Positions 11,444 through 58,495 of a DNA stretch of 64,000 nt are shown piece after piece. The stretch lies in IMG/VR virus record IMGVR_UViG_3300031963_000006, positions 151,251-215,250 of that record, one strand, 5' to 3'. The position numbers and the translations under genes are program-made. Under the pieces are notes generated by a model. The model was not told the origin of the DNA. It searched no databases and was given only the letters and a program-made list of their open reading frames with translations. Position 1 is the stretch's first letter. Every line of letters begins with the position of its first letter.

Positions 11444-12244
11444 ATGAAAGAAAAAAACACCGGTATTCCAATTAATCAAGAAGAAATTCAACATTACCTA
11501 AAAGATATTCGTAAAATTAAGGTTATGACCCCCGAGAGGGAACGTGAGTTGGCTAAGATGATTCAATCTGAAAATCTAACCAAACAACAACGAGATGAAA
11601 TCAACCAAGAAATTTTGGAAGGTAATCTCAGGTTTGTTATCACGGTGGCAAAACAATATCAAAATCAAGGTTTGGATTTTCCTGACTTGATTGCCGAGGG
11701 TAACTTAGGACTATTGAAAGCCATTCAAAACTTTGATTGGAGTAAAAACTTGAGGTTTATATCATATGCGGTTTGGTGGGTTAAACAATCTATCTTACAG
11801 TCCCTCAACGACAACGCTCGTACTATTCGACTTCCAGTAAATGTGGTTCAGGACCTACAACGAGCAAAGAAAGAGGTGGAATCTAAGGGTGGTAAATTGG
11901 ATGAGAGATTTGAAATGTTACCGTCTATTATTGATTTGGATATGAACATCAATGAAGAAGGTGATACTTTGGTTGATGTTATTAAGAACGAAGACGCGGA
12001 TATGCCTGATGCGGTGTTTAATAACAAAGACGTTCTTAAGATGGAACTAGTTGGATTGTTAAACGTTTTGGATGAGAGAGAACGAATAATCATATTGGAT
12101 TATTTCGGACTATCAGGTACACCAAGAACACTCGAAGACATAGGGTCTGACTTTAATTTGACGAAAGAGAGAGTACGACAAATTAAAGAAAAGGCTCTAA
12201 GAAAACTGAGGAACGAAAGTTCGGTTTTGTTCGACTACATGTAA
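11444..12244 (+). CDS. RNA polymerase sigma-70 factor, Bacteroidota sigma-A-like
   Basis: NLRFVITVAKQYQNQG, DLIAEGNLGL, FISYAVWW, TLEDIG..TKERVRQIKEKALRKLR; no region 1.1. Confidence 0.95.
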   Translation: MKEKNTGIPINQEEIQHYLKDIRKIKVMTPERERELAKMIQSENLTKQQRDEINQEILEGNLRFVITVAKQYQNQGLDFPDLIAEGNLGLLKAIQNFDWSKNLRFISYAVWWVKQSILQSLNDNARTIRLPVNVVQDLQRAKKEVESKGGKLDERFEMLPSIIDLDMNINEEGDTLVDVIKNEDADMPDAVFNNKDVLKMELVGLLNVLDERERIIILDYFGLSGTPRTLEDIGSDFNLTKERVRQIKEKALRKLRNESSVLFDYM

Positions 12245-26671: not shown

Positions 26672-26710
26672 AATTTAGGCACAATGGTGATATTTATACA
26701 AAAGACACCA

Positions 26711-27370
26711 ATGAGCACAGAAAAAGGAAAAATATACAAAATAACAAACTTAGTTAATGGTTTGATTTATATTGGGTGTACTGTGAATCCAATCAAACAC
26801 AGATTCGAAGAACATTTGTATAGATGTCTCAAAACTGATTATAAGTCAAAGTTATACAATTCAATAAAAAAATACGGTAAAGAAAATTTTACTATAGAAT
26901 TGATTGAAGAATGTGACTTGAATATTATTTACGAAACCGAAAAAAAATATATTGAAAAATATGATACTTTTAAAAATGGTTTAAATTCAACATTAGGAGG
27001 AGAAGGTTGTTTAGGATATGTTCATTCTGATGATATAAGAAAAAAAATATCGGAAAATACTAAAAAAGGAAATTCTCATAAAGGAAAGACTTATGAACAA
27101 TTATATGGTGATAGAGCCGAAGAGGAAAAATTAAAAAGGAGAGAAAATTCGGAATGGAAAGAAATGACCGAAGAAGAAAGAAAAAAAAGAGTAGAAAATA
27201 TTAAAATTGGAAATAGAAAAAAATCAAAGTACAGTTTTGAATTAGTAAAAGAAATTAAACAAAAAATAAATGAAGGGTTCAAAATAAAAGAACTTAAAAA
27301 ATTATATCCCCAAGTCTACGAAAATTTTTTCTATGATTTGAAAAATAATAGAAGATGGTCGGATATATAA
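26711..27370 (+). CDS. Free-standing GIY-YIG homing endonuclease (NUMOD3-like)
   Basis: GKIYKITN...IYIG, GLNSTLGGEG, HSDDIRKKIS; own TATTTAT promoter. Confidence 0.85.
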   Translation: MSTEKGKIYKITNLVNGLIYIGCTVNPIKHRFEEHLYRCLKTDYKSKLYNSIKKYGKENFTIELIEECDLNIIYETEKKYIEKYDTFKNGLNSTLGGEGCLGYVHSDDIRKKISENTKKGNSHKGKTYEQLYGDRAEEEKLKRRENSEWKEMTEEERKKRVENIKIGNRKKSKYSFELVKEIKQKINEGFKIKELKKLYPQVYENFFYDLKNNRRWSDI

Positions 27371-44889: not shown

Positions 44890-45338
44890 GATTTATAAAT
44901 GAAGTTGTCTGCAGATATACTTGGCTTATTTTCAGACCTTAAACTACCTGTACCAAAACTATAAAAAATACTCATATCATCTGGAATAAATTGGTAGGCC
45001 TTTGACAAAGTATCATTAATTTTTAGCCTCAAATTATGAGATATGTCTGAAATTTTCTCCCAATTATCAGTACCATAATCACCCCAATCAAACGGAGTTA
45101 GTAAAGCTCCAGTTACAAACTTTTCACCACTTTTAATACTTTCTAACCAATATTCTCTAACTTCCATATTCAAAAATTTACCAAGCTCAATAAAATCAAT
45201 ATAAAGATTGACGTAAATCACAGTGGAATATTTTTCCCAATCAGGTGTAAATTCCCAACCTTTAACAAAAGGAAATACCTTTTTAGTTGCTCTAACCGAT
45301 AAATCAATACCTTTAATTTGTTTTTCTGAAATTGCCAT
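44886..45338 (-). CDS. Hypothetical protein (MAISE leader)
   Basis: TATTTAT upstream; resembles 48230..48559 (KK.F/YP). Confidence 0.7.
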   Translation of the reverse strand: MAISEKQIKGIDLSVRATKKVFPFVKGWEFTPDWEKYSTVIYVNLYIDFIELGKFLNMEVREYWLESIKSGEKFVTGALLTPFDWGDYGTDNWEKISDISHNLRLKINDTLSKAYQFIPDDMSIFYSFGTGSLRSENKPSISADNFIYKS

Positions 45339-45372
45339 TGTATTGAATAAATATACAATAAACTAAAAGGGG

Positions 45373-45834
45373 TTACTTGACCCCCTTTTTTAACTTACCA
45401 CCTACAACCCTATTCTTCTTTGCTATATTCAAGTTTGACCAATCCTTATTACCCGTGATTTCTTCACCACAATAATCAGGAATATTAACAAGATTAATCT
45501 CATATTCTATTTCTGCCGATGTTTTACCATCAGGGTATACATCTATATCAACTTTGTTACCTTCAAACGTTGTTTTATATCTTGTTTTTTCAAGTTTAAT
45601 ATCGGTAGATTGATACAGGTGATTTGCATCCTGTATAGGAATTTCATATTCATACTCAGACTTTGTCGTCTTATCAATCTTAACTTTGTAGGCAACCCAT
45701 GCTTCCTTATCATCAATGATTCTAACCCTGAATTGTTTCTTCTTATCAAACATAAGATAGGCTTGTTTGATATGAATCGGGGTTAGACCTTCAGGTAGAT
45801 ACTTGAGTTTGAATTTACGTTCCCTTTCTATCAT
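45373..45834 (-). CDS. CYTH-domain (triphosphate tunnel) protein
   Basis: ERERKF, RVR, EYEY, EKTRY, DVY, AEIE. Confidence 0.85.
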   Translation of the reverse strand: MIERERKFKLKYLPEGLTPIHIKQAYLMFDKKKQFRVRIIDDKEAWVAYKVKIDKTTKSEYEYEIPIQDANHLYQSTDIKLEKTRYKTTFEGNKVDIDVYPDGKTSAEIEYEINLVNIPDYCGEEITGNKDWSNLNIAKKNRVVGGKLKKGVK

Positions 45835-46100
45835 CGGTATTTGTTATAAAGGTTTTCTAAAACCTCAATTTCCTCAGTTGTCATCTGATAATATTTGTCA
45901 GATAACAATAGCATTTTATCACTGAACTCAATTTCATTTGCGGTCATTTTTGTGTCATCCTTAACTTTGTGACGACTCAAATGACCCACTTCTCCAAGAT
46001 AGTTAATTAATAGTTGAATTTCTCTGTCAGTACAAGAATCAACAAATTCATCAATTTCAATGTCAACATCAACGTCGACTGTAGTGTAAATGGTTCCCAT
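45831..46100 (-). CDS. Hypothetical protein
   Basis: ORF; TACATTTG promoter near 46210. Confidence 0.7.
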   Translation of the reverse strand: MGTIYTTVDVDVDIEIDEFVDSCTDREIQLLINYLGEVGHLSRHKVKDDTKMTANEIEFSDKMLLLSDKYYQMTTEEIEVLENLYNKYR

Positions 46101-46239
46101 GTTATTTATCTTTTTCGGTTTTAATTGTTATTACACAAATTAAGAACAAGTATACGTAAAACGATATAATTGCTAATATTACTCCTACCACTTGTTTAAT
46201 TTTCTACAAATGTAAGAACAAAAACCTAAACAGACAAAT

Positions 46240-46572
46240 TTAATTTGGTGTGATATCTGAACAAATATCTAACAAAGATTCAAGACTGATTTTGATATTC
46301 TCAGATTCCAACTTGTTAAGGATTCTTTTTAGACTTAAACCAATAATAAAGTGGTCAATACCACCAACAGTTATTGTTCCAATAAAGGCAAAAGCCCAAT
46401 AAGTAATTGGCCATGGAGACCAAATTAAAGCCATTGATAATACGGCAACAAACGTTAATGCAAAAAATGGTTTAAGCCAATTCTTCATTCTGTTTAACCA
46501 TCTGTAGATTCCTAAATCGAAATAGTTATCGTGGAATACTTTTTTGATTCTGTTAATTTCTAATTGTGTCAT
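46240..46572 (-). CDS. Membrane protein
   Basis: 2 TM segments. Confidence 0.7.
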   Translation of the reverse strand: MTQLEINRIKKVFHDNYFDLGIYRWLNRMKNWLKPFFALTFVAVLSMALIWSPWPITYWAFAFIGTITVGGIDHFIIGLSLKRILNKLESENIKISLESLLDICSDITPN

Positions 46573-46576
46573 AGTA

Positions 46577-47089
46577 TTAATCTCTTATATAGTTATCTGG
46601 TATAACCTCTAAAACTTCTCTATCACTTACTCCACCCCCCAATAATTGAAATATCTGACCATTTATTTGGTCTACGTGAATCCAAATTTCTTTCATATTT
46701 AATTTACTGTCATTAAAACTTCCAACCTCAGACCCCATATCAGTAAGATAATCAAATAACCAAGACAATAAAATTTGTTTTTCTCTACTCTCTGTTAATT
46801 CAGGTATTATAACATTAACAGTTGCATCATAATGGTCTGGCATTTCTTCATCAAGTACTTGAAGTTCAGTTATAATAAATGGTAATTCAAACGGAATCAT
46901 AATTTCATCCTCATCTGCCGCTGAACAATAAAGATAACCACCAAGTTTGGACTGTACCATTGCTTGTAGGTAAGGATATTTTTTGGTAATATCTAATAAT
47001 TCATCTATACCACCAAAATATTTTGCAATGTCAAAAATATCTTGACCTTTATCCATCATTGATATTATGGTTTCAGAAACTCTACTCAT
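46577..47089 (-). CDS. Hypothetical protein
   Basis: TATTTAT upstream. Confidence 0.75.
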   Translation of the reverse strand: MSRVSETIISMMDKGQDIFDIAKYFGGIDELLDITKKYPYLQAMVQSKLGGYLYCSAADEDEIMIPFELPFIITELQVLDEEMPDHYDATVNVIIPELTESREKQILLSWLFDYLTDMGSEVGSFNDSKLNMKEIWIHVDQINGQIFQLLGGGVSDREVLEVIPDNYIRD

Positions 47090-47137
47090 AATCTATAAAT
47101 ATAAATATTATGAGATATTTATAATAAACTTAAAGTC

Positions 47138-47413
47138 ATGGATTGGATATTATTTTTAACAGTCATTTGGAAGACATGGAAATATCATATGGGAATGTGT
47201 TTATTGATATTAACTGGGTATTTTATGAATGAGTTTGGTTTTTGGGAAGATGAATACAGTTTATTTTACACATATGGTTTTGTTAGTTTGATTATCCCTG
47301 CTTTGGTTGTTATACCAATGATACTTATGGTTAGGGATTCGTATAAACATTATTTAGGTGTTAAAAAATACTATCCAAACGGATACATTAATAGAGATAA
47401 AACCAATAAATAA
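47138..47413 (+). CDS. Membrane protein
   Basis: TM segments; TATTTAT upstream. Confidence 0.65.
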   Translation: MDWILFLTVIWKTWKYHMGMCLLILTGYFMNEFGFWEDEYSLFYTYGFVSLIIPALVVIPMILMVRDSYKHYLGVKKYYPNGYINRDKTNK

Positions 47414-47814
47414 TGTTACTTAACGCTTTTATTTTTTTAGTTTTTGCAGGTATAACCAAAGGATTTTTGGATTATTATGCCGACTCAGGAATTAAAGAGA
47501 AGGAATGGAGAAACAAATATAAGATATCCGAACACGGTGATTTGATTAAGACTGAGGATATAAAACATTGGTGGTATTTAGGTTTATATAAACCAAGATT
47601 CGCAGAAAGATTTCCATTTAGTACGACAATATTGGTGGCTTTCACAGATAGATGGCACTTGGCTCAGTTAATTATGTTAAGATTCTTCTATTTGGCGGTA
47701 GCTGTAGGTGTGAGTAATAGTATATGGTGGGAATTATTATTATCATTCGTTGTATTTCCTATGGTAATAGGGGTGTTCTTTGATTTCACCTATTGTAAAC
47801 TCAAAAAGAGATGA
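47413..47814 (+). CDS. Membrane protein
   Basis: W.NKY...FPFSTT.LV..TD.WHL. Confidence 0.7.
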   Translation: MLLNAFIFLVFAGITKGFLDYYADSGIKEKEWRNKYKISEHGDLIKTEDIKHWWYLGLYKPRFAERFPFSTTILVAFTDRWHLAQLIMLRFFYLAVAVGVSNSIWWELLLSFVVFPMVIGVFFDFTYCKLKKR

Positions 47815-48233
47815 AATTTATAATCAAAGAAAGTAAGTTTAAAGAAACTATTATTGATAACATAGACAAGAATGGTCTATTAGATACACTTACTGTTACA
47901 AATATGAGTTTTACCAAATTGTTCTCAATGATTGGTATGGATTTTCTAACCAACAAAGTAATGATTAATTTTATTAGAGATTTTATAAAAGATTATGGAG
48001 TTTTTTCAGTTCACGATATAGGTGAAGACCCAATTCCATATAATAAAACGGGTGATGAATATAGAGAAATATCATATTTTTCAAAACAATATGTATATGT
48101 TGATGTTTATAGTGGAAATAACAATTTGGGTAATTTCAAAGTACATTATGAAAATTTATCTGATGATATACTGACGGAAGTCTTTGATTTAGTTATGGAA
48201 GCATATGAGGATGGAAAATTTAACAACATATGA
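47811..48233 (+). CDS. Protein with an MKFIIKES leader
   Basis: N-terminal motif. Confidence 0.75.
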   Translation: MKFIIKESKFKETIIDNIDKNGLLDTLTVTNMSFTKLFSMIGMDFLTNKVMINFIRDFIKDYGVFSVHDIGEDPIPYNKTGDEYREISYFSKQYVYVDVYSGNNNLGNFKVHYENLSDDILTEVFDLVMEAYEDGKFNNI

Positions 48234-48559
48234 TTCTCAACAATAAAATATTAAATAAACTTATTAACTCGGATTATATCAAAAAGATATATCCGATGAT
48301 TGACCGTATTGACACAAGAGTTGTTTGGGATGGGGATGAAGAATTTCCATTTTACAATATCGAATTGAATATACATTTAAATGACCCTGATATAACAACT
48401 TTCAATATGTTTGAAAAAGGGTTTGACCCACATTATTTGATTAATGAACATATGATTTTCATACTTAAAATGGCGGGAATTAACAGAAACACCGCAACAA
48501 TAGAACAAGTTTATATTAATGTATTAAGTCCTAACGGAGAAAATATATATAGGTATTAA
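48230..48559 (+). CDS. Hypothetical protein
   Basis: ORF. Confidence 0.7.
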   Translation: MILNNKILNKLINSDYIKKIYPMIDRIDTRVVWDGDEEFPFYNIELNIHLNDPDITTFNMFEKGFDPHYLINEHMIFILKMAGINRNTATIEQVYINVLSPNGENIYRY

Positions 48560-48570
48560 AATTAAATAAA

Positions 48571-49062
48571 ATGAATAATAATTTAAAAGAAGAATTACAA
48601 AGGATTAAAGAAATAATGGAGGTTTTAAATGAACAACTTCCATCAGTTCCTCAGTTATCTGATATAGGACTATCTTTACCCACGCCAGCAAGTACCTTTA
48701 GTGAACCAAGTTGTAAAGAAGAATATACGAAAGAAGAACTAGTTAAGGGTCTTGTGAAATGGTGTAAAAGTAAACCAAATTTTAATAAAGATGCCGGTAA
48801 CAGAGCAGGTGTAATACACAACGATTTAATTAATGTGTCAACTTCAATGATTACTACAGGTGAACTTAAAAATACCAAAACAACAGAGTCTTTTTGTGGT
48901 GTAATTAATAATTATTATTCAAAAGGATGGGACTTTATAAAGGACATTGATAATAAAACTCTTCTTAGTTGGGATAATGTCTATGAATCAATTCCTCAAA
49001 GTATTAAAACTGACTCAAAACAACAAAAATGTAAAATAAGACGTACTAGTTTTGATGCCTGA
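48571..49062 (+). CDS. Protein with an LKEELQRIKEIM...LNEQ leader
   Basis: N-terminal motif. Confidence 0.7.
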   Translation: MNNNLKEELQRIKEIMEVLNEQLPSVPQLSDIGLSLPTPASTFSEPSCKEEYTKEELVKGLVKWCKSKPNFNKDAGNRAGVIHNDLINVSTSMITTGELKNTKTTESFCGVINNYYSKGWDFIKDIDNKTLLSWDNVYESIPQSIKTDSKQQKCKIRRTSFDA

Positions 49063-49081
49063 TTAAGTATAACAAAAAAGA

Positions 49082-49480
49082 TTAATATACTGGTGTGTTT
49101 CTTCTGTGAGGGTAGATTGATACTTCATCAATATCAACATCAAACTTCTCACTAAACCAATCGGCAACAACATCCATAACCTTTGTTTCTCTAATTGATA
49201 CCATGAGACGGATTGTCTCTACAATATCAGGATGGATGTGTAAGTTACCAATACCATAATGTTTGCGTGCCTCCATACCAAAGTACGCGTCATCAAATTC
49301 GCCTGAACCAAAAAAGTAATATGTGATTCCCCCATTCCCTGTATTAGGGAGTAATGCAATTCTATATGCGTCACGATTATGAGGATTTACAATTTTTTTG
49401 CCATCTGATTCTGAAAATTTCTCATCCAAATATTTGTAGATGATACTATGAAGTTGAGTTTGTGTTATTATATATCTCAT
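49082..49480 (-). CDS. MKYLITESQ-family member (divergent)
   Basis: MRYIITQTQLHSIIYKYLD...VVADWFSEKF. Confidence 0.8.
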   Translation of the reverse strand: MRYIITQTQLHSIIYKYLDEKFSESDGKKIVNPHNRDAYRIALLPNTGNGGITYYFFGSGEFDDAYFGMEARKHYGIGNLHIHPDIVETIRLMVSIRETKVMDVVADWFSEKFDVDIDEVSIYPHRRNTPVY

Positions 49481-49481
49481 A

Positions 49482-49787
49482 TTAGGATAACGAATTTATT
49501 TTTAAATCATATTCTTTTTCTAAGTAAAGTGCCATCATGTCTATGAACGTGATAATTTTTATACTAAACATATCCCACTCATTACTAAAATATCCTCCAT
49601 TAAAATAATAATTATGGAGCTCACCTTCTGAGGGAGAGCCAACTAATAACTCTCCATCAGGACCCCATAATACTTTCCATTTTTCACCGTCATAATTTCT
49701 TATCTCCAATTTTGAATTCTTAAATCTTGAATCAAAAAACGGTTTCATTAGTTTGTAAAGTTGTTCTTGGTTTAAAAGGTATTCCAT
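49482..49787 (-). CDS. MKYLITESQ-family member (divergent)
   Basis: MEYLLNQEQL; TATTTAT upstream. Confidence 0.7.
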   Translation of the reverse strand: MEYLLNQEQLYKLMKPFFDSRFKNSKLEIRNYDGEKWKVLWGPDGELLVGSPSEGELHNYYFNGGYFSNEWDMFSIKIITFIDMMALYLEKEYDLKINSLS

Positions 49788-49799
49788 AACGTATAAATA

Positions 49800-50117
49800 T
49801 TAACCAGCACCGTAATCTGAGTAGGGGTATTTAATTTCAATACCAATTTTACCCTCAACCCATTTTGCAATTATCATTAAAGAACGAGTCAAGTTCAAAG
49901 AAAAGAATTCTGCAACTTCGGTTAGAATATCTGAACTTATATAACAATCATCACTCATGTAATAATATGCAATTTTTGCATATTGATTGTCTTTATAACT
50001 ACGTTCAGATTCAAAGAAATAATGACCTCCACCATCTTCACGATGATAAAAGTCCTGAGTATTAAGATACTTAAATACTATACTATCAATTTGAGATTCG
50101 GTTATTAGATATTTCAT
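49800..50117 (-). CDS. MKYLITESQ-family core paralog
   Basis: MKYLITESQIDSIVFKYLNTQDF...FFSL...IIAKWVE. Confidence 0.85.
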   Translation of the reverse strand: MKYLITESQIDSIVFKYLNTQDFYHREDGGGHYFFESERSYKDNQYAKIAYYYMSDDCYISSDILTEVAEFFSLNLTRSLMIIAKWVEGKIGIEIKYPYSDYGAG

Positions 50118-50118
50118 A

Positions 50119-50502
50119 TTAAGAGATATTAGCGTTTCTCACATCAAATACTTTATATTCGGGGAACACAACATTAAAGGCGTCTGACATTAAATATTTA
50201 CCGTGAACATACCAAAAAGGATGTGGAAGTATCTTTTCAAACAAGTCACCAAATTCTCTACTATAATATAATTCACCTGTCATACCATCCTCATATATAA
50301 CAAAAACACATATTGTTTCACCATTAGAATTGGATATGAAAATTCTATTAGTTCCATCATCATATGAATCAAATTGGTCAACAATGTAAGGAATAATTTT
50401 ATCCTTTATCTTATTGTATTGTTCCTCATATTGAAAATCCCTCCAATCCCTTTCAAGTTCGGAGATAAGTTTAAGTTGTGATTCTGTGATTATATATTTC
50501 AT
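50119..50502 (-). CDS. MKYIITESQ-leader protein with a different body
   Basis: Shares only the leader. Confidence 0.8.
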   Translation of the reverse strand: MKYIITESQLKLISELERDWRDFQYEEQYNKIKDKIIPYIVDQFDSYDDGTNRIFISNSNGETICVFVIYEDGMTGELYYSREFGDLFEKILPHPFWYVHGKYLMSDAFNVVFPEYKVFDVRNANIS

Positions 50503-50505
50503 GTT

Positions 50506-50817
50506 TTAAAAATAATATACAACGATATCTGATTGAACATCAACCGCACTATAATGTGTGCCAGTTTTACTTTCAACCCACTTAGAAATTGCGGAAATAG
50601 CATCGATATTACTCAAAGAAAAGAAAGAAACGATTTCATCCATTAATTTTCTATCAATCGTACACCAATAACTATTGAATCTAATTTGAGCGTATTCATC
50701 TTTCTCTGAATTAAGGAAATAACCGTTTATTCCATACTCCATATAAACAAAGTCCTGATTATCCAAATACTTAAAGATTAGGTTTTCAATTTGAGATTCG
50801 GTGATTAGGTATTTCAT
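50506..50817 (-). CDS. MKYLITESQ-family core paralog
   Basis: True start 50817 (track ORF over-extended); TATTTAT 5 nt upstream. Confidence 0.85.
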   Translation of the reverse strand: MKYLITESQIENLIFKYLDNQDFVYMEYGINGYFLNSEKDEYAQIRFNSYWCTIDRKLMDEIVSFFSLSNIDAISAISKWVESKTGTHYSAVDVQSDIVVYYF

Positions 50818-50842
50818 ATGATTATAAATATAACGTATTACT

Positions 50843-51160
50843 CTATCTAACGTGTACTTCCCTAACATTCGTATCCAATTTATTTTCAACCCATCTACCG
50901 ATAATATATTTAGAATCATTAAAGTCCAATGAAAAGAATGTGGTAATCTCATCAATCAATTCATGATTTATCCAACAATCACCATCTCGATAGAAATTAA
51001 TTAATGAATCAGTATATAAATCTTCACTTGAATTAAGAAAGTGAATTATATTGCTAAACCCAAAAGACGTTTTAGGTGATTTTTTTATAATAAAGTCCTG
51101 ATTATCGAGGTACTTAAAAACAACATTATCAAGCTTAGATTCGGTGATAAGATATTTCAT
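50843..51160 (-). CDS. MKYLITESQ-family core paralog
   Basis: MKYLITESKLDNVVFKYLDNQDF. Confidence 0.85.
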   Translation of the reverse strand: MKYLITESKLDNVVFKYLDNQDFIIKKSPKTSFGFSNIIHFLNSSEDLYTDSLINFYRDGDCWINHELIDEITTFFSLDFNDSKYIIGRWVENKLDTNVREVHVR

Positions 51161-51172
51161 ATGATATAAATA

Positions 51173-51502
51173 TTAGTTAGGAGTTCTTAAAGAAGAAACC
51201 ATATCTTCAGTGACAAAGAATATGTTGGTAACCTTCATTTTTAAATTATTTTCAACCCACTTACCAATAACTTTTTTAGAATTAGATTCTCGCAGAGAAA
51301 AGAAGGAAGAAATTTCGTTAACCAATTTATAAGATATAAAACACCACTCATCATTTTCATCATATCTAATCTGAGCATATTCATCATTTTCGGAATTAAC
51401 AAAAAATAAACTAACACTATCGCCGACAACAATAAAGTCCTGATTATTCAAGTACTTAAAGATTACATTATCAATTTGTGATTCGGTGATAATATATTTC
51501 AT
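51173..51502 (-). CDS. MKYLITESQ-family core paralog
   Basis: MKYIITESQIDNVIFKYLNNQDF. Confidence 0.85.
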   Translation of the reverse strand: MKYIITESQIDNVIFKYLNNQDFIVVGDSVSLFFVNSENDEYAQIRYDENDEWCFISYKLVNEISSFFSLRESNSKKVIGKWVENNLKMKVTNIFFVTEDMVSSLRTPN

Positions 51503-51524
51503 ATGATATAAATACTAGTTATAT

Positions 51525-51830
51525 CTATCTAATTATAATTTCTTTAACTCTTCTACCCAAAGTATTTTCAACCCATCTGGCAATAACATATTTAGAACCA
51601 TCAAATTCCATAGAGAAGAATTCTGCAATTTCATTAATTAACTCAAAACTCATGACACACTCACCACCACTTCTATAGTATTGGATTAATCCGCCCGAAA
51701 ATTCATCATTTTCTGAATTAACGAAGTAAGTTATATTATCACTATTCATTTTCTTAATAATAAAGTCCTGATTATCCAAATACATGAATATAAGGTTATC
51801 AATCTGTGATTCGGTGATAAGATATTTCAT
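51525..51830 (-). CDS. MKYLITESQ-family core paralog
   Basis: MKYLITESQIDNLIFMYLDNQDF. Confidence 0.85.
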   Translation of the reverse strand: MKYLITESQIDNLIFMYLDNQDFIIKKMNSDNITYFVNSENDEFSGGLIQYYRSGGECVMSFELINEIAEFFSMEFDGSKYVIARWVENTLGRRVKEIIIR

Positions 51831-51842
51831 ATGGTATAAATA

Positions 51843-52178
51843 TTAATTATAATAGGGTATTCTCAACGCAAACCACTTCGTGTTGTTGCGCCATTCGGTG
51901 TTTGTGACCTTCATTTGTAGTCTATTTTCAACCCATCTACCAATAACTGGTTCAGAATCATAATGTGACATAGAAAAGAAGGTGGAAATTTCTTCAATTA
52001 ATTTATAATGTACATAACACCAATTATCATTTTTATCATATTTAATTTGAGCGTATACATCATTCACTGAGTTCACGAAGTATATTTTTTCATCAAAGTT
52101 AATCTGAATAAAATCTTGGTTATCCAAATACTTAAAGATTACTTTATCAATTTGTGATTCGGTGATTAGGTATTTCAT
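51843..52178 (-). CDS. MKYLITESQ-family core paralog
   Basis: MKYLITESQIDKVIFKYLDNQDF. Confidence 0.85.
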   Translation of the reverse strand: MKYLITESQIDKVIFKYLDNQDFIQINFDEKIYFVNSVNDVYAQIKYDKNDNWCYVHYKLIEEISTFFSMSHYDSEPVIGRWVENRLQMKVTNTEWRNNTKWFALRIPYYN

Positions 52179-52486
52179 TTGATTAATATTACGTCTATTG
52201 TTATACCATAAACTTCATACGGGGGAAAACCTGTATTGGGGCTATAACCACTTGTTTTAATATCCAAATAAGTCAATATTGTTCTCCTAATCTCACGTTC
52301 AAAATTTCGTTCTTTTAATTCGTCAGGGTTATAATGGTTAGGGTTGGTTATGTATGAATCATCAATATCATAAAAATAAACATCAATTAATATCTCATCA
52401 TCATATTCACTCTTTCTAACTTTAATCTTTTCAGGTGAGTATAACGATTCAATCAACTTAACAATGGCTTTAATTTTACTGTTCAT
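52175..52486 (-). CDS. Unrelated gene inside the array, sharing the upstream TTTATATCATATG signal
   Basis: Start MNSKIK. Confidence 0.75.
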   Translation of the reverse strand: MNSKIKAIVKLIESLYSPEKIKVRKSEYDDEILIDVYFYDIDDSYITNPNHYNPDELKERNFEREIRRTILTYLDIKTSGYSPNTGFPPYEVYGITIDVILIK

Positions 52487-52496
52487 ATGATATAAA

Positions 52497-52826
52497 TTAC
52501 GACCATATACCACCGACGCGTTTCTGAGCCGCGGAGAGAGGTTTAATGTGAGACACCTCTACCTCTAAAGTTTTTTCAACCCATCTAGCGATAACTACTT
52601 TAGAATCAGATTTATCCATAGAAAAGAAGTCGGAAATTTGATTAATTACTTTGTCACTAAGCATACAAACTCCACTTTCTTTATTGTATACAATTATAGA
52701 GGTGACATCTCCCTCAGATTTTTTAAAGTATATTTTATTATCCTTTTTAACTTGAACTAATCCTTGACTATCCAAATACATGAATATAAAGTTATCCATT
52801 TGTGATTCTGTTATAATGTATTTCAT
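52497..52826 (-). CDS. MKYLITESQ-family core paralog
   Basis: MKYIITESQMDNFIFMYLD...FFSM...VIARWVE. Confidence 0.85.
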   Translation of the reverse strand: MKYIITESQMDNFIFMYLDSQGLVQVKKDNKIYFKKSEGDVTSIIVYNKESGVCMLSDKVINQISDFFSMDKSDSKVVIARWVEKTLEVEVSHIKPLSAAQKRVGGIWS

Positions 52827-52910
52827 ATGATATAAATATAATGACGCAACAAAATAACCACCTTTACTTAACGGGGGGAATTTACTATAATTAAAATAAA
52901 AAATATAGAT

Positions 52911-53540
52911 ATGAATATAATCGAATCGTTGCAGTGGAGATACGCCACAAAGAAAATGAATGGGGAGAAAATCCCACAGGATAAATTAGATAGAATATTA
53001 GAGGCAACACGACTGGCCCCGAGTTCATATGGACTAACACCATATAATGTAATCGTGGTGGAGAACCAAGAACTAAAGGAACAACTTGTTTCAGCATGTT
53101 ATGGTCAGACACAACTGGCAGATTCATCAGCGGTATTAGTATTTGCCACATGGGACACAATCAATGAAGAATCGGTGGACAAGTATATGAATGAAATTGC
53201 CACCCAAAGAGGAATCGGTGTAGATATGTTAGCTGACTTTAATGGTATGGTTAAAGGAACACTCTCATATATGAATGAAGAACAGAAAACAACATGGGCT
53301 CAGAAACAAACATATATAGGATTAGGTTTCGCATTAGTAACAGCGGCATTAGAAGAAGTAGATTCAACTCCAATGGAGGGATTCGTTCCAGCACAAGTAG
53401 ATGAAATATTAGGTCTTAAAGAGTTAGGTCTAAAGTCATCAGTACTTCTTACATTAGGATATAGAGATTCAGACAATGATTACCTATCAGCACTTAAGAA
53501 AGTAAGATGGGATAATGAGATGTTCTTTATTAGAAAATAA
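52911..53540 (+). CDS. NAD(P)H nitroreductase (NfsB-like)
   Basis: WRYATK, LAPSSYGL, DSTPMEGF, LGY; TTTACT-N17-TATAAT upstream. Confidence 0.9.
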   Translation: MNIIESLQWRYATKKMNGEKIPQDKLDRILEATRLAPSSYGLTPYNVIVVENQELKEQLVSACYGQTQLADSSAVLVFATWDTINEESVDKYMNEIATQRGIGVDMLADFNGMVKGTLSYMNEEQKTTWAQKQTYIGLGFALVTAALEEVDSTPMEGFVPAQVDEILGLKELGLKSSVLLTLGYRDSDNDYLSALKKVRWDNEMFFIRK

Positions 53541-53614
53541 TATAATATACTCACTCACTACAATGGGGACTCCTAAAGGGTCCCCTTTTTCGTTCATTCG
53601 TACATTATATTATT
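53536..53614. terminator. Terminator hairpin nested in a longer bulged inverted repeat
   Basis: Inner ggggactc/gggtcccc + T5; outer aataatataat/attatattatt. Confidence 0.7.
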
Positions 53615-53686
53615 ATACCCGATTAGTTTGATATTTAATATAATATACGTATATTTGTATATATTTATAATGTAAAGGGTATAATT

Positions 53687-54235
53687 ATGGAACAAATGAT
53701 GATTTACGGACTATATTGTCCGAATACAAATAAGCCAGTATATGTTGGGCAATCAAAGGTGGGGTTATATAGACCCTTTGCACATATAAATGAGAAGTCA
53801 CATAGTGATAAAGTAAACGAGTGGGTTAAGTTTCTAAAGAAGGATGGACAAAGTCCCGTATTAGTTATATTAGAACAAAACTTCCCAAACAAATATACAA
53901 ATGATAAGGAGTTGTTTTGGATTAATAAGTTCATCAATGACGGGAATGTATTACTAAATCAGGCGGGAATCAAACCATACTATTTCTATCACACGCAACT
54001 AAAGAACGAGAATGAGGATGATTACCTATTAGAACTCAGGAACTTTGTGAAGACGAGGAGAAAGATGTTAAAGTTAAGTCAGAAAGAACTTGCTGAAAAG
54101 TCAGGTCTCGGACTACGATTCATTAGAGAATTCGAACAGGGGACAAAGACAAACTTCCAAACTGATTCAATATATCAACTGTGTAGAATGTTCGGACGTA
54201 ATAAGATGTCAATTACATTTGTGGTAGATAATTAA
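53687..54235 (+). CDS. GIY-YIG-like domain fused to an XRE HTH
   Basis: IYGL...VYVGQS...E..WI...LLN; LSQKELAEKSGLGLRFIREFEQG. Confidence 0.8.
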   Translation: MEQMMIYGLYCPNTNKPVYVGQSKVGLYRPFAHINEKSHSDKVNEWVKFLKKDGQSPVLVILEQNFPNKYTNDKELFWINKFINDGNVLLNQAGIKPYYFYHTQLKNENEDDYLLELRNFVKTRRKMLKLSQKELAEKSGLGLRFIREFEQGTKTNFQTDSIYQLCRMFGRNKMSITFVVDN

Positions 54236-54332
54236 TAAGATAATCTCATTCCCCCCATTTTACTACGTAATCGTTCCACTCCACTATCGTTACGTTCCAC
54301 TAATGGGTTCATTCGTTTATCTTATTAATTAT
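54228..54332. repeat. Perfect 16-bp inverted repeat closing a bulged hairpin
   Basis: ataattaataagataa (54228-43) / ttatcttattaattat (54317-32); inner cccatt/aatggg. Confidence 0.8.
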
Positions 54333-55186
54333 TCCCCCATATATGAGGGACACAATGTATAGGACATATAGTAACCCATAGTGAAATAATGTGTGAGATG
54401 TATAAGATTATACTATATGGTATTATACTAATGGGTATAATTTTGGTGTGTGATTATGGTGGGAGATTACAGGTCATTAATGACAATGATTTCTCCCACA
54501 ATTTACCACACATATTATTGTCCATATGTAAGGTGTCTATGTTTAAGGGGAAGTATAATGTCCCACTAAAGTGGTTTCGTTGAAGGTCTATCCTAACACA
54601 CTACGTGTTCCCCCGCTGTATGGGGATTAATAGACATTTTTTGCTGGGTTTTATATATAGTAAAAAAAATAGTGTTCCTGACTACTACAGAGGGGGAAAA
54701 TCCCCTTTCTTATACCCTACGTGACCATTAGTGGTGGTAAATTGTGGTAAGACATGGTGGTAAAAGGTGGGAGAAATACGTCAAAAGGGATTATCCCCAT
54801 CTTAACGTTCACCTGACATTTTGACAAAATCAAGTTTTTTAACACATTTAACAATAAAAAAATGGACCTGACACTATGACAGAATTGACTTCCCCCTATT
54901 ATATCTTATCATTATAACATGTACTTAAACAAGTTTTCAACAAGTGTGGAAAAAAAGGGTGAGGACTTTATTGTGAATTATGAAGACAACACTCACTACG
55001 GACATTGTATATACAGGACAATGGAACTTACGGGAAATAAGAAACCCATCCGTCAGTCAGTACTCTTAATGACTCACTGTCAGATGGGGGGAATTATTGA
55101 TTCAATAAATAATCAAACTCCACTTACAGAAAAGGACCACGAAGGTCTATCCAAAGAGATTAGGGAACACTCACTACAGACTCTGA

Positions 55187-55582
55187 CTACTTGGCTCTCA
55201 GGTCAGAAAGAAGATAACGATTAAACTTCTTCTCAACAAACCTAGCCTCAACCTCAAAGGGGTTGTCCCAATAACCATGTGTAATAAGAGCGGGGATATA
55301 CTTGGTACGAACAGGTTGTAAGTAGTGAGTATATTCATGAATGAATGTGGAGGTTAAACGACCAACAGTCTTACACTCGGTAAGAGATACATGGATATGA
55401 TTATTGACGGGACAATAAAAACCATAGAACCCATCATCATCTTTTCCAAAGGAGTATGTGAGACCAGAGCGTTTTCTATTGTTAACCCCCATGTTCTCAT
55501 AACACCACTCAGCGCAGAACTGAAGAACTTTCTTGATTTGTTTCTTGGTTAAGGTTTCTATTGGTGTTTTGCTGTATATCAT
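55187..55582 (-). CDS. HExxH zinc-metallopeptidase-like protein
   Basis: TFIHEYTHYLQ...NPFEVEAR. Confidence 0.75.
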   Translation of the reverse strand: MIYSKTPIETLTKKQIKKVLQFCAEWCYENMGVNNRKRSGLTYSFGKDDDGFYGFYCPVNNHIHVSLTECKTVGRLTSTFIHEYTHYLQPVRTKYIPALITHGYWDNPFEVEARFVEKKFNRYLLSDLRAK

Positions 55583-55940
55583 TCTTTTTCTTTTTATAGG
55601 TGAACTTATGAACTCGTGAACTTTGGATACCATAGAACATCAGCATGGTATGTAGAAGATTATTGGGGAAAAAATAGTACATATTATTATTCCTTCTTCG
55701 GGTAATGGCCGTCTTGCTATACCAACCATTCTCTGCCATTCTTTGGTACCTTGGATTATCCTCGGTGATATCCACTTCAACATTGATTCTTGCCCAAGCA
55801 ATCTCCCCATCATTATGAGGGTATGACATCTCATGAATGGAGATAAACCTAAGGGTCCCTTTCATGCCATCACAGTCAAAGGGGAATAACTTCTTTCCCA
55901 TTGTCTCTCTAATAATCTTGGTGAGTCGTTTGTTATCCAT
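55509..55940 (-). CDS. Hypothetical protein
   Basis: TTTG...TATATTTG 4 nt before the ATG (MDNKRL). Confidence 0.7.
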   Translation of the reverse strand: MDNKRLTKIIRETMGKKLFPFDCDGMKGTLRFISIHEMSYPHNDGEIAWARINVEVDITEDNPRYQRMAENGWYSKTAITRRRNNNMYYFFPNNLLHTMLMFYGIQSSRVHKFTYKKKKNDIQQNTNRNLNQETNQESSSVLR

Positions 55941-56400
55941 GACACAAATATACGGCGACTTCCCCATTGTACAAATCTACTTATCAACAATATTATTTGT
56001 TAAATCTCTTGGAGGATATTAATCTGTGCCGTACCTTTGGTTGATGCCTTTCTGTGTGGGGGAAACAATAAAGCATCATGCTAAGTTACGACCCCCAAGG
56101 TTAACTACCAAACAATTTAACACTTATAGTTATTAACAATCCTTGTATATATCCCCATTCTGACATGACATCATTAGAGACCATTTAACAACAGGGGGGA
56201 CCCACTATGTCAGACTGTCATAATAGGTGGGGGTATGGGGTATATAGGGGGGTGGGTCCCTATAGTGGGGGTATCCCCCCTCCCCCTCCCCGTCATATTG
56301 TCAGTAAAAAGGGGGGACAATCCCTTTTGCAAAATATGGAAATAAAATTCTGGAAAAATTTTCTGGAAAATTTTGGTATTTATATGTAAAATAATACACT

Positions 56401-56739
56401 ATGAAAAAAGTTATAAGATTAACGGAGTCTGATTTAACAAAACTTGTTAAGAGGATAATTAACGAAATGGATAATGATGATTTTTATTATAAGGCAAAAC
56501 CTGATATGAATTATTATTATGATAAATTTGATAATGTGGGTCCATCTGATGATGAATTCGGTGACTATGATGTTGATGAGTATGGTGAAGACGAATTTGA
56601 AAGATTCATGTCAAAATATCCTTTTGGGGATAAACAGAATACTTTCCCTGATGATGAACATGGAAGAAGATATTTCAAGGGGTATTCCAAATCACATGGT
56701 GGTAAATTTCCTGTATATAAAAGAAAAGGTAAAATGTAA
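56401..56739 (+). CDS. Protein with an MKKVIRLTESDL leader
   Basis: TATTTAT upstream; terminator downstream (56768-56798). Confidence 0.8.
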   Translation: MKKVIRLTESDLTKLVKRIINEMDNDDFYYKAKPDMNYYYDKFDNVGPSDDEFGDYDVDEYGEDEFERFMSKYPFGDKQNTFPDDEHGRRYFKGYSKSHGGKFPVYKRKGKM

Positions 56740-56842
56740 CCCCTCCGATGATAGTATTGTCGGACTGACCCCATCTCTAATAAAGGTGGGGTTTTTTTAT
56801 TTGATATATACTTATTGGTATAAACCTTGTTATAATTTAATT

Positions 56843-57022
56843 ATGAAAAAAATACTTATATCTTTTCTTATGATTGGTTTGTTTGGATGTGCCAGTGTTA
56901 ATGGGTCCACTTGTTGTGACTCAAAGACTGAATGTGTAAAACAAACTGAGTGTTGTGGTATGGACCACTGTGATAAAACAAAATGTGAAGGACAATGTTG
57001 TGACAAATCTTGTTGCGGTTAA
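56843..57022 (+). CDS. 59-aa Cys-rich lipoprotein
   Basis: Lipobox LFGC plus 11 further Cys; terminator after the stop. Confidence 0.7.
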   Translation: MKKILISFLMIGLFGCASVNGSTCCDSKTECVKQTECCGMDHCDKTKCEGQCCDKSCCG

Positions 57023-57958: not shown

Positions 57959-58495
57959 ATGAAATTTATTCTTACAGAGTCACAATACGCAGGATTAATG
58001 AAACTAATCAAAAAACATGAAGACGATTTAAGTTTTTTGAAAAGTAGCGTGGTCACATCAATTGAACATGATGTAACAGATTTATTAAACTCCAAGTTTC
58101 AAGGTAGATTTGGACACTATGGTTATATGCAATACCCCTCATTTTTTATTTATCCCGAAAAATTGGCGTCCGAACTTGCGAAATATAATGTAAGGGAACC
58201 ATTTTTGGTTATTGAGTATCATGTAAAAAAATCCACAGGTAAAGTTGAAATTAACATCTTTTGGAATTCAAACATATATTTTGATTATAAAAAAGAAAAT
58301 GGTAGATGGGAAAGACATAGACAACCCAAAAATAGTATTAAGTGGGACTATATAAATAACCCTGATGGACAAGAGGAATTCTTATCTAAATTGGAAAAGA
58401 CCATTAACGGAAGAATTAGTGAAAAGGCTCAAAACAAAATTATTAATGATTTTGAAAAACTTTATTCAGGGCCATCACCTAAGTTTTTTTCCTAA
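57959..58495 (+). CDS. Protein with an MKFILTESQ leader
   Basis: TATTTAT 4 nt upstream. Confidence 0.8.
   Translation: MKFILTESQYAGLMKLIKKHEDDLSFLKSSVVTSIEHDVTDLLNSKFQGRFGHYGYMQYPSFFIYPEKLASELAKYNVREPFLVIEYHVKKSTGKVEINIFWNSNIYFDYKKENGRWERHRQPKNSIKWDYINNPDGQEEFLSKLEKTINGRISEKAQNKIINDFEKLYSGPSPKFFS

What the first reader, a model, noticed from the sequence alone, without database searches (positions are those of the whole stretch)
49082..52826. Tandem hypervariable array of MKYLITESQ paralogs, most with their own start signal
Seen: eleven 100-130 aa genes head-to-tail on the minus strand. Seven are clear paralogs with a conserved N-terminus (MKY[LI]ITES[QK].D..[IV]F.YL..QDF), a conserved C-terminal block (I..FFS....[VI]I..WVE) and a highly variable middle and tail. 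Three share mainly the leader. One unrelated gene (52175-52486) occupies a slot with the same upstream DNA. Most starts follow near-identical TATTTATAnCAT-ATG, so promoter plus first codons form a repeated nucleotide block. Known: T-even phages carry variable internal-protein (IPI-type) cassettes with a shared N-terminal capsid-targeting sequence, and IPI blocks a restriction enzyme. Inference: an expandable, recombination-shuffled arsenal of small packaged effectors, possibly anti-defence, with the conserved 5' blocks as exchange points.
Basis: partly seen in the sequence, partly recalled or inferred. Interest (0 to 1): 0.85.

Follow-up and report, generated by a model that had tools for sequence, protein, structure and literature searches.

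The report
Leader-tagged gene array in jumbo phage
A large uncultured lake phage carries a row of eleven small genes, most of them copies of one uncharacterised protein family, whose members all begin with the same nine amino acids and whose order is reshuffled by recombination between close relatives; what the proteins do is still unknown.

Summary
Window 49082-52826 (minus strand) has eleven head-to-tail genes. Seven are clear paralogs, one is a distant full-length homolog, one is a remote homolog with the same fold, one is uncertain, and one is unrelated.

The window is identical to part of a 321-kb IMG/VR viral contig. Relatives show it is a contractile-tailed jumbo phage, and the window's genes lack Shine-Dalgarno sites.

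The family is very large (over 2,000 clusters at 90% identity), found only in viral and metagenomic DNA. It has no Pfam, PHROG or PDB match, and a confident AlphaFold model shows an alpha/beta fold with no solved analog.

The paralogs are old duplicates. Each subtype is under purifying selection (dN/dS 0.07-0.38), but gene order and content differ between close relatives. One crossover maps inside the conserved 5' block, which supports recombinational shuffling.

New here: the nine-residue leader MKY[IL]ITES[QK] also heads at least 43 other protein clusters. It is conserved as a peptide, not as DNA, and it contains an I-x-E motif like T4 prohead-protease sites.

Packaging and anti-defence roles were not tested. 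The proteins are not IPI homologs, and ten of the eleven are acidic.

The parts
52497..52826 (-). Cassette A: family member, 109 aa, the most divergent of the seven clear paralogs. The only non-acidic member (pI 7.8).
   Evidence: (E 2e-45)
52175..52486 (-). Cassette U: unrelated 103-aa gene without the leader, preceded by AATTTATATCATATG. It recurs inside arrays of other phages.
51843..52178 (-). Cassette B: family member, 111 aa. Its start overlaps the stop of U by 4 nt. This is the protein modelled by AlphaFold2.
51525..51830 (-). Cassette C: family member, 101 aa. Its position in the array differs in relative L006.
51173..51502 (-). Cassette D: family member, 109 aa.
50843..51160 (-). Cassette E: family member, 105 aa. 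It is truncated by a 211-nt deletion in the otherwise identical contig L021.
50506..50817 (-). Cassette F: family member, 103 aa. The ATG at 50817 is the real start; the listed TTG ORF extends further upstream.
50119..50502 (-). Cassette G: 127 aa, with the leader plus a body that is a remote homolog with the same fold and an extra helical insert after the leader.
49800..50117 (-). Cassette H: family member, 105 aa. Its start lies 1 nt after the stop of G.
49482..49787 (-). Cassette I: 101 aa with a degenerate leader (MEYLLNQEQ). Homology to the family was not shown.
49082..49480 (-). Cassette J: 132 aa, a distant full-length family homolog with leader MRYIITQTQ.
   Evidence: (E 4e-10)
52827..52910 (.). 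Divergent intergenic region between cassette A and the nitroreductase gene (52911-53540, + strand). It holds the first TATTTATATCAT start signal of the array.
51158..51172 (-). One example of the start-proximal motif TATTTATAnCATATG. Others lie at 52824-52838, 52484-52498, 51828-51842, 51500-51514 and 49785-49799, and a variant spaced one base wider lies at 50815-50830. The same octamer precedes many non-array genes.
47811..48233 (+). Leader-bearing gene outside the array (MKFIIKESK, 140 aa, body unrelated at sequence level).
57959..58495 (+). Leader-bearing gene outside the array (MKFILTESQ, 178 aa, body unrelated at sequence level).

Best explanation
What it is: a tandem array from a very large, virus-only, uncharacterised protein superfamily. 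It lies in the accessory part of the genome of a ~321-kb uncultured contractile-tailed jumbo phage. The host is probably a Bacteroidota bacterium.

Anatomy of one member: a flexible N-terminal peptide of about 7-9 residues, MKY[IL]ITES[QK], followed by a ~100-residue alpha/beta domain (helix, four strands, two helices, one strand) that has no solved structural analog.

Shown:
- Only the leader and the hydrophobic core are conserved. The surface and the tail vary, and no catalytic-looking residue set is conserved.
- The paralogs are ancient duplicates, and each subtype is kept by purifying selection.
- The array evolves by gain, loss and reordering of whole cassettes, through homologous recombination in the conserved block made of the start signal plus the leader codons.
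- The leader is selected as a peptide, and it heads many other protein clusters in the same phage lineage.

Inferred:
- The domains are non-enzymatic binding modules, each aimed at a different partner. This would make them accessory host-interaction factors, with counter-defence or host takeover the most plausible roles.
- The shared leader is an address tag read by one common partner.
- The leading candidate for that role is a T4-CTS-like signal for targeting and processing during capsid assembly, with cleavage after E7 at I-T-E. I put that specific step at only about 0.3.

Expression: seven cassettes have their own AT-rich start-proximal signal 4-5 nt before the ATG. Four are coupled to the preceding gene.
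For: Genome identity and type:
- The window is 100% identical over 12 kb to IMGVR_UViG_3300031951_000002, a 321,403-bp contig.
- A syntenic relative carries gp25-like baseplate wedge, SprB-repeat fibre-like giant proteins, DnaK and DnaJ.
- Homologs of T4 gp18 and gp19 occur in contigs of the wider set that carry a leader-bearing gene.
- Only 4 of 90 genes have an SD-like site, against 2.6 by chance.

Family size and novelty:
- 2,087 clusters at 90% identity and 557 clusters at 50% identity.
- None in 185,579 prokaryotic species genomes.
- No significant Pfam, PHROG or PADLOC hit.
- AlphaFold2 pLDDT 92.6. The best Foldseek match in the PDB has E 0.9 and all TM-scores are 0.33 or lower. A profile search of PDB sequences found nothing significant.

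Conservation pattern.

Evolution:
- Old duplicates: pS about 0.6 in every region. pN is 0.12 in the N-block against 0.34 in the C-terminal block, 0.44 in the middle and 0.56 in the tail.
- Subtypes cluster across genomes rather than within them.
- Ortholog dN/dS is 0.07-0.38, pooled 0.27.
- Gene order differs between relatives.
- Mosaic: L006 cassette B matches window B with a single mismatch from about nt 60 onward, but carries an E-type first ~45 nt and a different upstream junction.
- Between orthologs, dS is higher in the conserved blocks (0.44 and 0.36) than in the middle (0.10).

Leader:
- 299 unique leader-bearing ORFs in 2.09 Mb of related loci. Of these, 157 have the family body and 142 fall into 43 other clusters.
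- Synonymous codons vary freely at every degenerate leader position.
- The leader is coil or low-confidence in both models.
- I-x-E lies at residues 5-7. A second [LI]-x-E at residue 15 or 16 occurs in 35% of the other clusters, against 1.4% background.
- T4 gp21 cleaves after L/I-X-E, and the T4 CTS is 10 residues long (PMC9026906).
Against: - No functional data of any kind exist. The phage and its host are uncultured.
- The head module and prohead protease of this lineage were not found in the DNA I could reach. T4 gp20-24 gave no hit there. The I-x-E match therefore rests on a three-residue motif.
- Positions 5 and 7 were part of the pattern used to collect the leader set. Their near-invariance in that set is partly circular.
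- Ten of the eleven proteins are acidic (pI 4.4-5.8). That fits cytoplasmic early proteins at least as well as proteins packed next to DNA.
- Leader genes lie among nucleotide-metabolism and accessory genes, not head genes.
- At least one 'other body' (G) turned out to be the same fold. The number of truly unrelated bodies is therefore lower than 43.
- The gene-order differences come from metagenome assemblies. Exact repeats between cassettes are short, about 25 nt or less, so chimeric assembly is unlikely but not excluded.
Confidence: 0.55

Rival explanations
1. The proteins are T4-IP-type internal head proteins. The leader binds the scaffolding core, a gp21-like protease removes it after E7, and the mature proteins are injected with the DNA to block host restriction or other defences.
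For: - A short shared leader sits on many diverse small proteins.
- The leader is flexible in the models.
- I-T-E lies at residues 5-7, and a second L/I-x-E is enriched at residue 15 or 16.
- The rules for the T4 CTS and for gp21 cleavage are in PMC9026906. The diversity of T-even internal proteins, with only the CTS conserved, is in PMC3012670.
- Contigs of the wider set that carry a leader-bearing gene have T4-like sheath and tube genes, and a syntenic relative has a gp25-like baseplate wedge.
- One leader-bearing 57-aa gene lies inside a tail-gene cluster.
Against: - No sequence or fold similarity to IPI* or to any PDB entry, and no tblastn hit in 50,697 phage records, which include T4.
- The proteins are acidic.
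- No gp20-24 homologs were detected in about 3 Mb of related loci.
- There are no proteomic data.
Confidence: 0.3
2. The proteins are early or middle cytoplasmic host-takeover or anti-defence proteins that are never packaged. The leader is kept because it serves expression or stability. Examples would be efficient initiation and early elongation in a host that does not use Shine-Dalgarno pairing, protection from N-terminal degradation, or docking to a host or phage chaperone.
For: - They are small, acidic proteins with individual start signals, in an accessory region among replication and nucleotide-metabolism genes.
- The window's genes do not use SD sites.
- Codon choice in the leader is skewed toward C-ending codons relative to the genome: TAC 56% of Tyr codons against 24%, and ATC 43% against 14%. 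This hints at an expression-level constraint.
- The phages encode DnaK and DnaJ.
Against: - Strict conservation of T6, E7 and S8 across dozens of clusters, despite free synonymous change, is more than AU-richness or an optimal second codon would need.
- The Hsp70 gene is not clearly linked to the leader genes: 18 of 190 loci. I estimate about 4-7% by chance.
Confidence: 0.3
3. The conserved block is primarily a DNA element. In this view it is a mobile regulatory and recombination cassette like the T4-type PeSLs, and the shared first codons are a by-product.
For: - A crossover maps in the block.
- The block includes a genome-wide start-proximal motif.
- PeSL-mediated shuffling is established in T4-type phages (PMC2839356).
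Against: - Synonymous sites in the leader are as diverged as elsewhere (pS 0.59), and every degenerate codon position varies across 222 genes while the peptide stays fixed.
- No stem-loop terminator lies between cassettes. The spacers are only 1-25 nt long.
Confidence: 0.08

Closest known systems
T-even phage internal-protein loci (IPI, IPII, IPIII and variants) with the capsid targeting sequence
   Same: - Small, diverse proteins share only a short N-terminal peptide of about 10 residues.
- The peptide ends in an L/I-x-E motif.
- The gene sets differ between related phages.
- The host is a large contractile-tailed phage.
(PMC3012670, PMC9026906)
   Different: - No sequence or fold homology.
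- The leader is 7-9 residues long, and the bodies are mostly one hyper-diverged alpha/beta fold.
- There are far more copies: 12 leader genes in 64 kb, and up to at least 14 family copies per 20 kb in relatives.
- The proteins are acidic.
- Packaging, cleavage and a gp21-type protease are not shown.
PeSL regulatory cassettes that mediate modular shuffling in hyperplastic regions of T4-type genomes
   Same: Short conserved sequences at gene boundaries act as crossover points. They produce insertions, deletions and replacements of small non-essential ORFs between close relatives (PMC2839356).
   Different: - Here the homology runs into the coding sequence and is maintained at the peptide level.
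- There is no promoter-plus-terminator stem-loop unit.
- Mini-circles were not examined.
Paralogous inner-body and ejection protein families of phiKZ-like giant phages (phiKZ, 201phi2-1, SPN3US)
   Same: Giant phages carry multigene families of head-internal proteins that a gp21-related protease processes after Glu at a short motif (PMC9026906).
   Different: - Their motif is S/A-X-E and their propeptides are long (PMC9026906). From my own knowledge, those proteins are also larger.
- No homology to them was detected, and no head association is shown here.

Membership tests
T4 IPI / T-even internal proteins | Sequence or structural homology to IPI* or another internal protein | tested here: not met
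   tblastn against 50,697 phage records, which include T4, gave no match. The Foldseek PDB search gave a best E of 0.9. The profile search of PDB sequences gave a best E of 0.054, to CAP, which I treat as noise.
T4 IPI / T-even internal proteins | A short N-terminal targeting peptide shared by otherwise dissimilar proteins | tested here: met
   The leader MK[YF][IL]ITES[QK] is found on 299 unique ORFs: the family plus 43 other BLAST clusters. Caveat: at least one 'other' cluster has the same fold.
T4 IPI / T-even internal proteins | An L/I-x-E processing site at the end of the leader | tested here: inconclusive
   I-T-E at residues 5-7 is near-invariant, and a second [LI]-x-E at residue 15 or 16 is enriched about 20-fold in the other clusters. 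However, the motif has only three residues, and positions 5 and 7 were part of the search pattern. Cleavage itself cannot be tested here.
T4 IPI / T-even internal proteins | A gp21-type prohead protease and a scaffolding core encoded by the same phage | not testable with these tools
   Only 64 kb of about 321 kb is in the window. An 80-kb walk along a relative's contig and about 1 Mb of sheath-gene loci gave gp25, gp18 and gp19 homologs but no gp20-24 hit.
T4 IPI / T-even internal proteins | Presence in the virion and injection into the host | not testable with these tools
   The phage is uncultured and no proteome is available.
T4 IPI / T-even internal proteins | Basic, DNA-compatible charge, as in IPII and IPIII (own knowledge) | tested here: not met
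   Ten of the eleven proteins have pI 4.4-5.8 and net charge -2 to -9.
PeSL-type shuffling cassettes | A sigma70-like promoter plus a stem-loop terminator between ORFs | tested here: not met
   No terminator-like hairpin lies between cassettes, and promoter-like hits are not above shuffled expectation (44 against 50.1). The spacers are 1-25 nt.
PeSL-type shuffling cassettes | Recombination at the conserved boundary element produces indels, replacements and reordering between close relatives | tested here: met
   The order differs among the window, L006, L007 and L015, and a breakpoint lies in the 5' block.
Any curated protein family (Pfam, PHROGs, PADLOC) | A significant profile match | tested here: not met
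   for the array. for 46 other leader-bearing proteins, where the only hit was one DUF6576.

The most novel reading that the evidence does not exclude
The nine-residue leader is a universal sorting and processing tag in a very abundant lineage of lake jumbo phages. It would direct dozens of proteins per genome, and hundreds of hyper-diverged ones across the lineage, into the capsid for co-injection or to another phage-built compartment. That would define a second, independently evolved CTS-type delivery system and a huge, recombination-shuffled repertoire of injected host-interaction proteins built on a fold not seen before.
Probability: 0.3. Interest if true: 0.85.

Novelty: new variant of a known kind. 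Interest (0 to 1): 0.62.

Why it matters
If the leader is a targeting tag, these phages offer a second natural example of how a virus loads a changeable set of small proteins for delivery into the host. The only well-studied case is T4.

It would also give a simple sequence rule for finding the delivered proteins in metagenomes. That could annotate thousands of currently nameless phage genes at once.

Even without that, three things are useful in themselves:
- The array is a clear natural example of cassette shuffling by recombination within a coding leader.
- The family is a large, confidently modelled fold with no solved structure.
- The leader-bearing proteins are good candidates for new inhibitors of bacterial defence or housekeeping proteins in Bacteroidota.

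Tried and rejected
- Known families. Pfam, PHROGs and PADLOC on the array proteins gave nothing significant. Pfam and PHROGs on 46 other leader proteins gave only one DUF6576.
- Cultured or deposited phages. blastn and tblastn of the array against 50,697 phage records found no match.
- Structural analogs. Foldseek against the PDB found none. BFVD returned only uncharacterised proteins of an uncultured Caudovirales phage.
- Literature. A full-text search for the leader string found 0 papers.
- Bacterial origin or prophage. No family member exists in one genome per 185,579 species.
- Recent gene conversion keeping the 5' block uniform. Rejected, because synonymous divergence there is saturated like the rest.
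- Positive selection. Ortholog dN/dS values are all below 0.4. Paralog comparisons are saturated and uninformative.
- Linkage of the leader genes to the phage Hsp70. Only 18 of 190 loci carry it, so the idea was dropped.
- Locating the head protease. I walked 80 kb along a syntenic ENA contig. I searched all loci with T4 gp18-24. I tested ORFs next to the sheath gene, which proved to be an SNF2 helicase and a superoxide-dismutase fusion, not head genes.
- Eukaryotic giant virus. I considered this because of the AT-rich start motif and the absence of SD sites. I rejected it because of overlapping and coupled genes, a bacterial-type sigma factor, SbcCD, a holin and DUF3310 in a relative, and gp18, gp19 and gp25 homologs in relatives.
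- tRNAs. None were found in the window.

Full report
**1. The observation**

The minus strand between 49082 and 52826 carries eleven consecutive ORFs of 101-132 aa.
- Seven align over their whole length at 39-59% identity. They have 22 invariant columns: the N-terminus M-K-Y-x-I-T-E-S, one Cys, an FFS block and a WVE block. Each scores E 1e-41 to 1e-51 against a family HMM.
- 49082-49480 is a real but distant full-length homolog (E 4e-10).
- 50119-50502 matches only its first 13 residues when compared as a single sequence.
- 49482-49787 shows no significant match.
- 52175-52486 is unrelated.

The upstream string TATTTATAnCATATG (up to 2 mismatches) occurs 15 times in the window against 2.7 expected, and none of 100 shuffles reached 15. 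Seven of the eleven genes carry it or a variant spaced one base differently, 4-5 nt before the ATG. The other four abut or overlap the preceding stop codon. A 100-nt block covering this signal and the first codons is repeated seven times at 65-84% identity.

One correction is needed. The octamer is a genome-wide signal. It lies 4-17 nt upstream of many unrelated genes, so that 22 of 90 genes have it against 4.4 expected.

**2. The genome**

The window is 100% identical over 12 kb to three IMG/VR viral contigs, the longest 321,403 bp. It encodes a primase, an exonuclease, SbcCD, a sigma factor, two DNA methyltransferases, a homing endonuclease and a nitroreductase. It has no tRNA. SD-like sites precede only 4 of 90 genes, against 2.6 by chance.

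A related 162-kb ENA contig is syntenic with the window across SbcD, SbcC, DUF6576, sigma factor and amidase. Walking along it revealed SprB-repeat and glycine-rich fibre-like giant proteins, a gp25-type baseplate wedge, ribonucleotide reductase, DnaJ and DnaK. Homologs of T4 tail sheath and tube occur in contigs of the wider set that carry a leader-bearing gene.

This is therefore a contractile-tailed jumbo phage. SprB and CHU_C domains, together with the lack of SD sites, point to a Bacteroidota host. That host assignment is an inference from established knowledge of that phylum.

**3. The family**

- A profile of the seven paralogs finds 2,087 clusters at 90% identity, none with an informative name, on contigs up to 294 kb.
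- An exhaustive HMMER search finds 557 clusters at 50% identity.
- No member exists in one genome from each of 185,579 bacterial and archaeal species.
- There is no significant Pfam, PHROG or PADLOC match and no hit in deposited phage genomes.
- AlphaFold2 with a 109-sequence alignment gives a confident model (pLDDT 92.6, pTM 0.85). Residues 1-6 are coil. Then come helix 7-19, four strands, two helices, a fifth strand and a short, low-confidence C-terminal helix.
- Foldseek finds nothing in the PDB (best E 0.9, all TM-scores 0.33 or lower). In BFVD it finds only uncharacterised proteins of an uncultured Caudovirales phage. A profile search of PDB sequences is also empty.
- Across 109 diverse members, only M1, K2, I5, Y17, L18, F68 and W82 are at least 90% conserved. 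That is the leader plus the hydrophobic core.

This pattern suggests a scaffold with variable surfaces rather than an enzyme. That reading is an inference.

**4. How the array evolves**

*Within the window.* Synonymous divergence between paralogs is saturated everywhere (pS 0.49-0.66), including the N-terminal block (0.59). Non-synonymous divergence is 0.12 in that block against 0.34-0.56 elsewhere. The paralogs are therefore old, and the N-terminus is kept by selection on the peptide, not by recent homogenisation.

*Across genomes.* A maximum-likelihood tree of members from six genomes groups them by subtype, not by genome. Orthologous pairs between the window and L006 (flanks about 89% identical) are 67-96% identical, or 81-96% for the six clear paralogs. 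Their dN/dS is 0.07-0.38, pooled 0.27. There is no sign of diversifying selection.

*What changes is content and order.*
- Window: A,U,B,C,D,E,F,G,H,I,J.
- L006: X1,X2,B,D,E,C,F,G,H,I,J.
- L007: Y,B,D',X2,E,C.
- L015 differs again.
- Copy number ranges from 1 to at least 14 per 20 kb or less across 74 loci.

*A crossover can be seen directly.* L006 cassette B matches window B with a single mismatch from about nt 60 to the stop. Its first ~45 coding nucleotides are E-type, and its upstream junction is that of X2. Consistent with this, dS between orthologs is higher in the blocks conserved among paralogs (0.44 and 0.36) than in the unique middle (0.10).

Exact repeats between cassettes are about 25 nt or less. 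Assembly chimeras are therefore unlikely, though only long reads can exclude them.

**5. The leader is the most general feature**

Searching related loci for M-[KR]-[YF]-[LIVM]-[LIV]-[TKNS]-[EQ]-[STE]-[QKE] at ORF starts gave 299 unique proteins of at least 60 aa in 2.09 Mb. Of these, 157 have the family body. The other 142 (75-403 aa) fall into 43 clusters that neither BLAST nor the family HMM links to it. None of the cluster representatives has a Pfam or PHROG match, apart from one DUF6576. In the window, two further leader genes lie outside the array, at 47811-48233 and 57959-58495.

Across 222 distinct genes every degenerate codon position of the leader varies: Tyr TAC 110 and TAT 85; Ile5 ATC 93, ATA 80 and ATT 41; Thr ACA 103, ACC 76 and ACT 20. 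The peptide stays fixed. The constraint is therefore on the peptide.

A caution applies to the count of other bodies. Cassette G, which looked like 'leader plus another body', proved to be a remote homolog.
- Profile-profile probability is 95.5%, E 1.6e-8.
- Its AlphaFold model (pLDDT 85.9) has the same order of secondary-structure elements, and its leader has low confidence.
- Foldseek matches it to main-family members with TM-scores of 0.5-0.64.

Some of the 43 clusters are therefore likely hyper-diverged versions of one fold. Others, up to 403 aa, must contain more.

**6. What the leader might do**

In T4, the first 10 residues of the internal proteins are a capsid targeting sequence. The prohead protease gp21 removes it by cutting after Glu in L/I-X-E (PMC9026906). 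T-even internal proteins are otherwise highly diverse (PMC3012670).

Here the leader contains I-T-E at residues 5-7, just before the first helix of the fold. In 35% of the non-family clusters a second [LI]-x-E lies at residue 15 or 16, against 1.4% per position elsewhere. This fits a removable targeting propeptide.

The motif is short, however, and positions 5 and 7 were part of my search pattern. I could not find the head module or protease of this lineage. The proteins are acidic (pI 4.4-5.8 for ten of eleven), and their neighbours are replication, nucleotide-metabolism and accessory genes. One 57-aa leader-bearing zinc-ribbon-like gene does sit in a tail-gene cluster next to the sheath gene.

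I therefore treat 'shared address tag read by one common partner' as likely. I put 'capsid targeting with cleavage' at about 0.3. An expression or stability role in cytoplasmic early proteins is comparably likely. A pure DNA-cassette role is largely excluded.

**7. Comparison with known systems**

In design this resembles T-even internal-protein loci and PeSL-mediated shuffling (PMC2839356). It is a member of neither.
- There is no homology to IPI*.
- There is no promoter-terminator stem-loop unit between cassettes.

The family, its fold and its leader appear undescribed: a full-text search for the leader string returned nothing.

**8. Verdict**

It is an array from a huge, uncharacterised, leader-tagged superfamily in abundant lake jumbo phages, shuffled by recombination in the leader block and held under purifying selection. 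The IPI-type packaging and anti-defence inference remains an untested analogy.

Noticed in passing
L021 (IMGVR_UViG_3300008267_000598), compared with window 45000-56883: A contig from another sample is otherwise nearly identical to the window (one gap outside the deletions), but has three internal deletions of 211, 97 and 79 nt with 1-8 nt of microhomology. Each truncates a leader-bearing gene: cassette E, cassette G and the 47811-48233 gene. This suggests these genes are dispensable in part of the population, or that the assembly has errors.
   Followed up: partly
window, genome-wide, e.g. 16408, 33470, 36803, 37611, 38134, 47101(-), 47116, 53662, 56377, 61652: The octamer TATTTATA lies 4-17 nt upstream of the start codons of many small accessory genes, but not of the replication genes. 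It is the reverse complement of the T4 late-promoter octamer (own knowledge). With a 4-nt spacer it would imply leaderless or near-leaderless mRNAs if it is a promoter. A phage sigma factor is encoded at 11444-12244.
   Followed up: partly
related loci, residues 13-16 of leader proteins outside the main family: A second [LI]-x-E motif at residue 15 or 16 occurs in 35% of cluster representatives, against 1.4% background. This gives an extended leader of the form MKYIITESQ-x-x-x-[LI]-x-E.
   Followed up: partly
leader codons 3, 5 and 6 in 222 genes of related loci: C-ending codons are strongly over-used in the leader relative to long ORFs of the same loci: TAC 56% of Tyr codons against 24%, ATC 43% against 14%, ACC 37% against 16%. 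This possibly reflects a translation-level constraint on top of the peptide constraint.
   Followed up: no
L164 1410-1583 and L202, L210, L217, L220, L226, L236, L238, L239: A 57-aa protein made of the leader plus a CxxC...CxxC zinc-ribbon-like body is conserved between two ORFs of unknown function (171 and 346 aa), directly upstream of a 1066-aa T4 gp18-like tail sheath gene. It is the only leader gene I saw inside a structural gene cluster.
   Followed up: partly
P0121, P0122, P0123, P0155 (about 200-230 aa): Some database members contain two family domains in one protein. They are either true tandem fusions or read-through of adjacent cassettes.
   Followed up: no
window 53687-54235 (+), 26684-27370 (+); L001 7492-7956: Homing-endonuclease-type genes lie near arrays. 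There is a GIY-YIG-type homing endonuclease at 26684-27370, an HTH_3 protein at 53687-54235 whose N-terminus looks GIY-YIG-like by eye only, and an HNH-like ORF directly upstream of the six-copy array in L001. Double-strand breaks from such enzymes could promote the cassette exchange.
   Followed up: no
L001 18519-20306; L002 12044-13930; L192 3316-4230: These phages encode a full DnaK (Hsp70) and a DnaJ. Hsp70 lies within about 10 kb of leader genes in 18 of 190 loci, which I estimate is only slightly above chance.
   Followed up: yes
L208 3747-5285 (-): A 512-aa ORF in a sheath-gene locus has a Mn/Fe superoxide dismutase domain (E 8e-59 to PDB entries) in residues 36-230, fused to about 280 further residues of unknown nature.
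   Followed up: no
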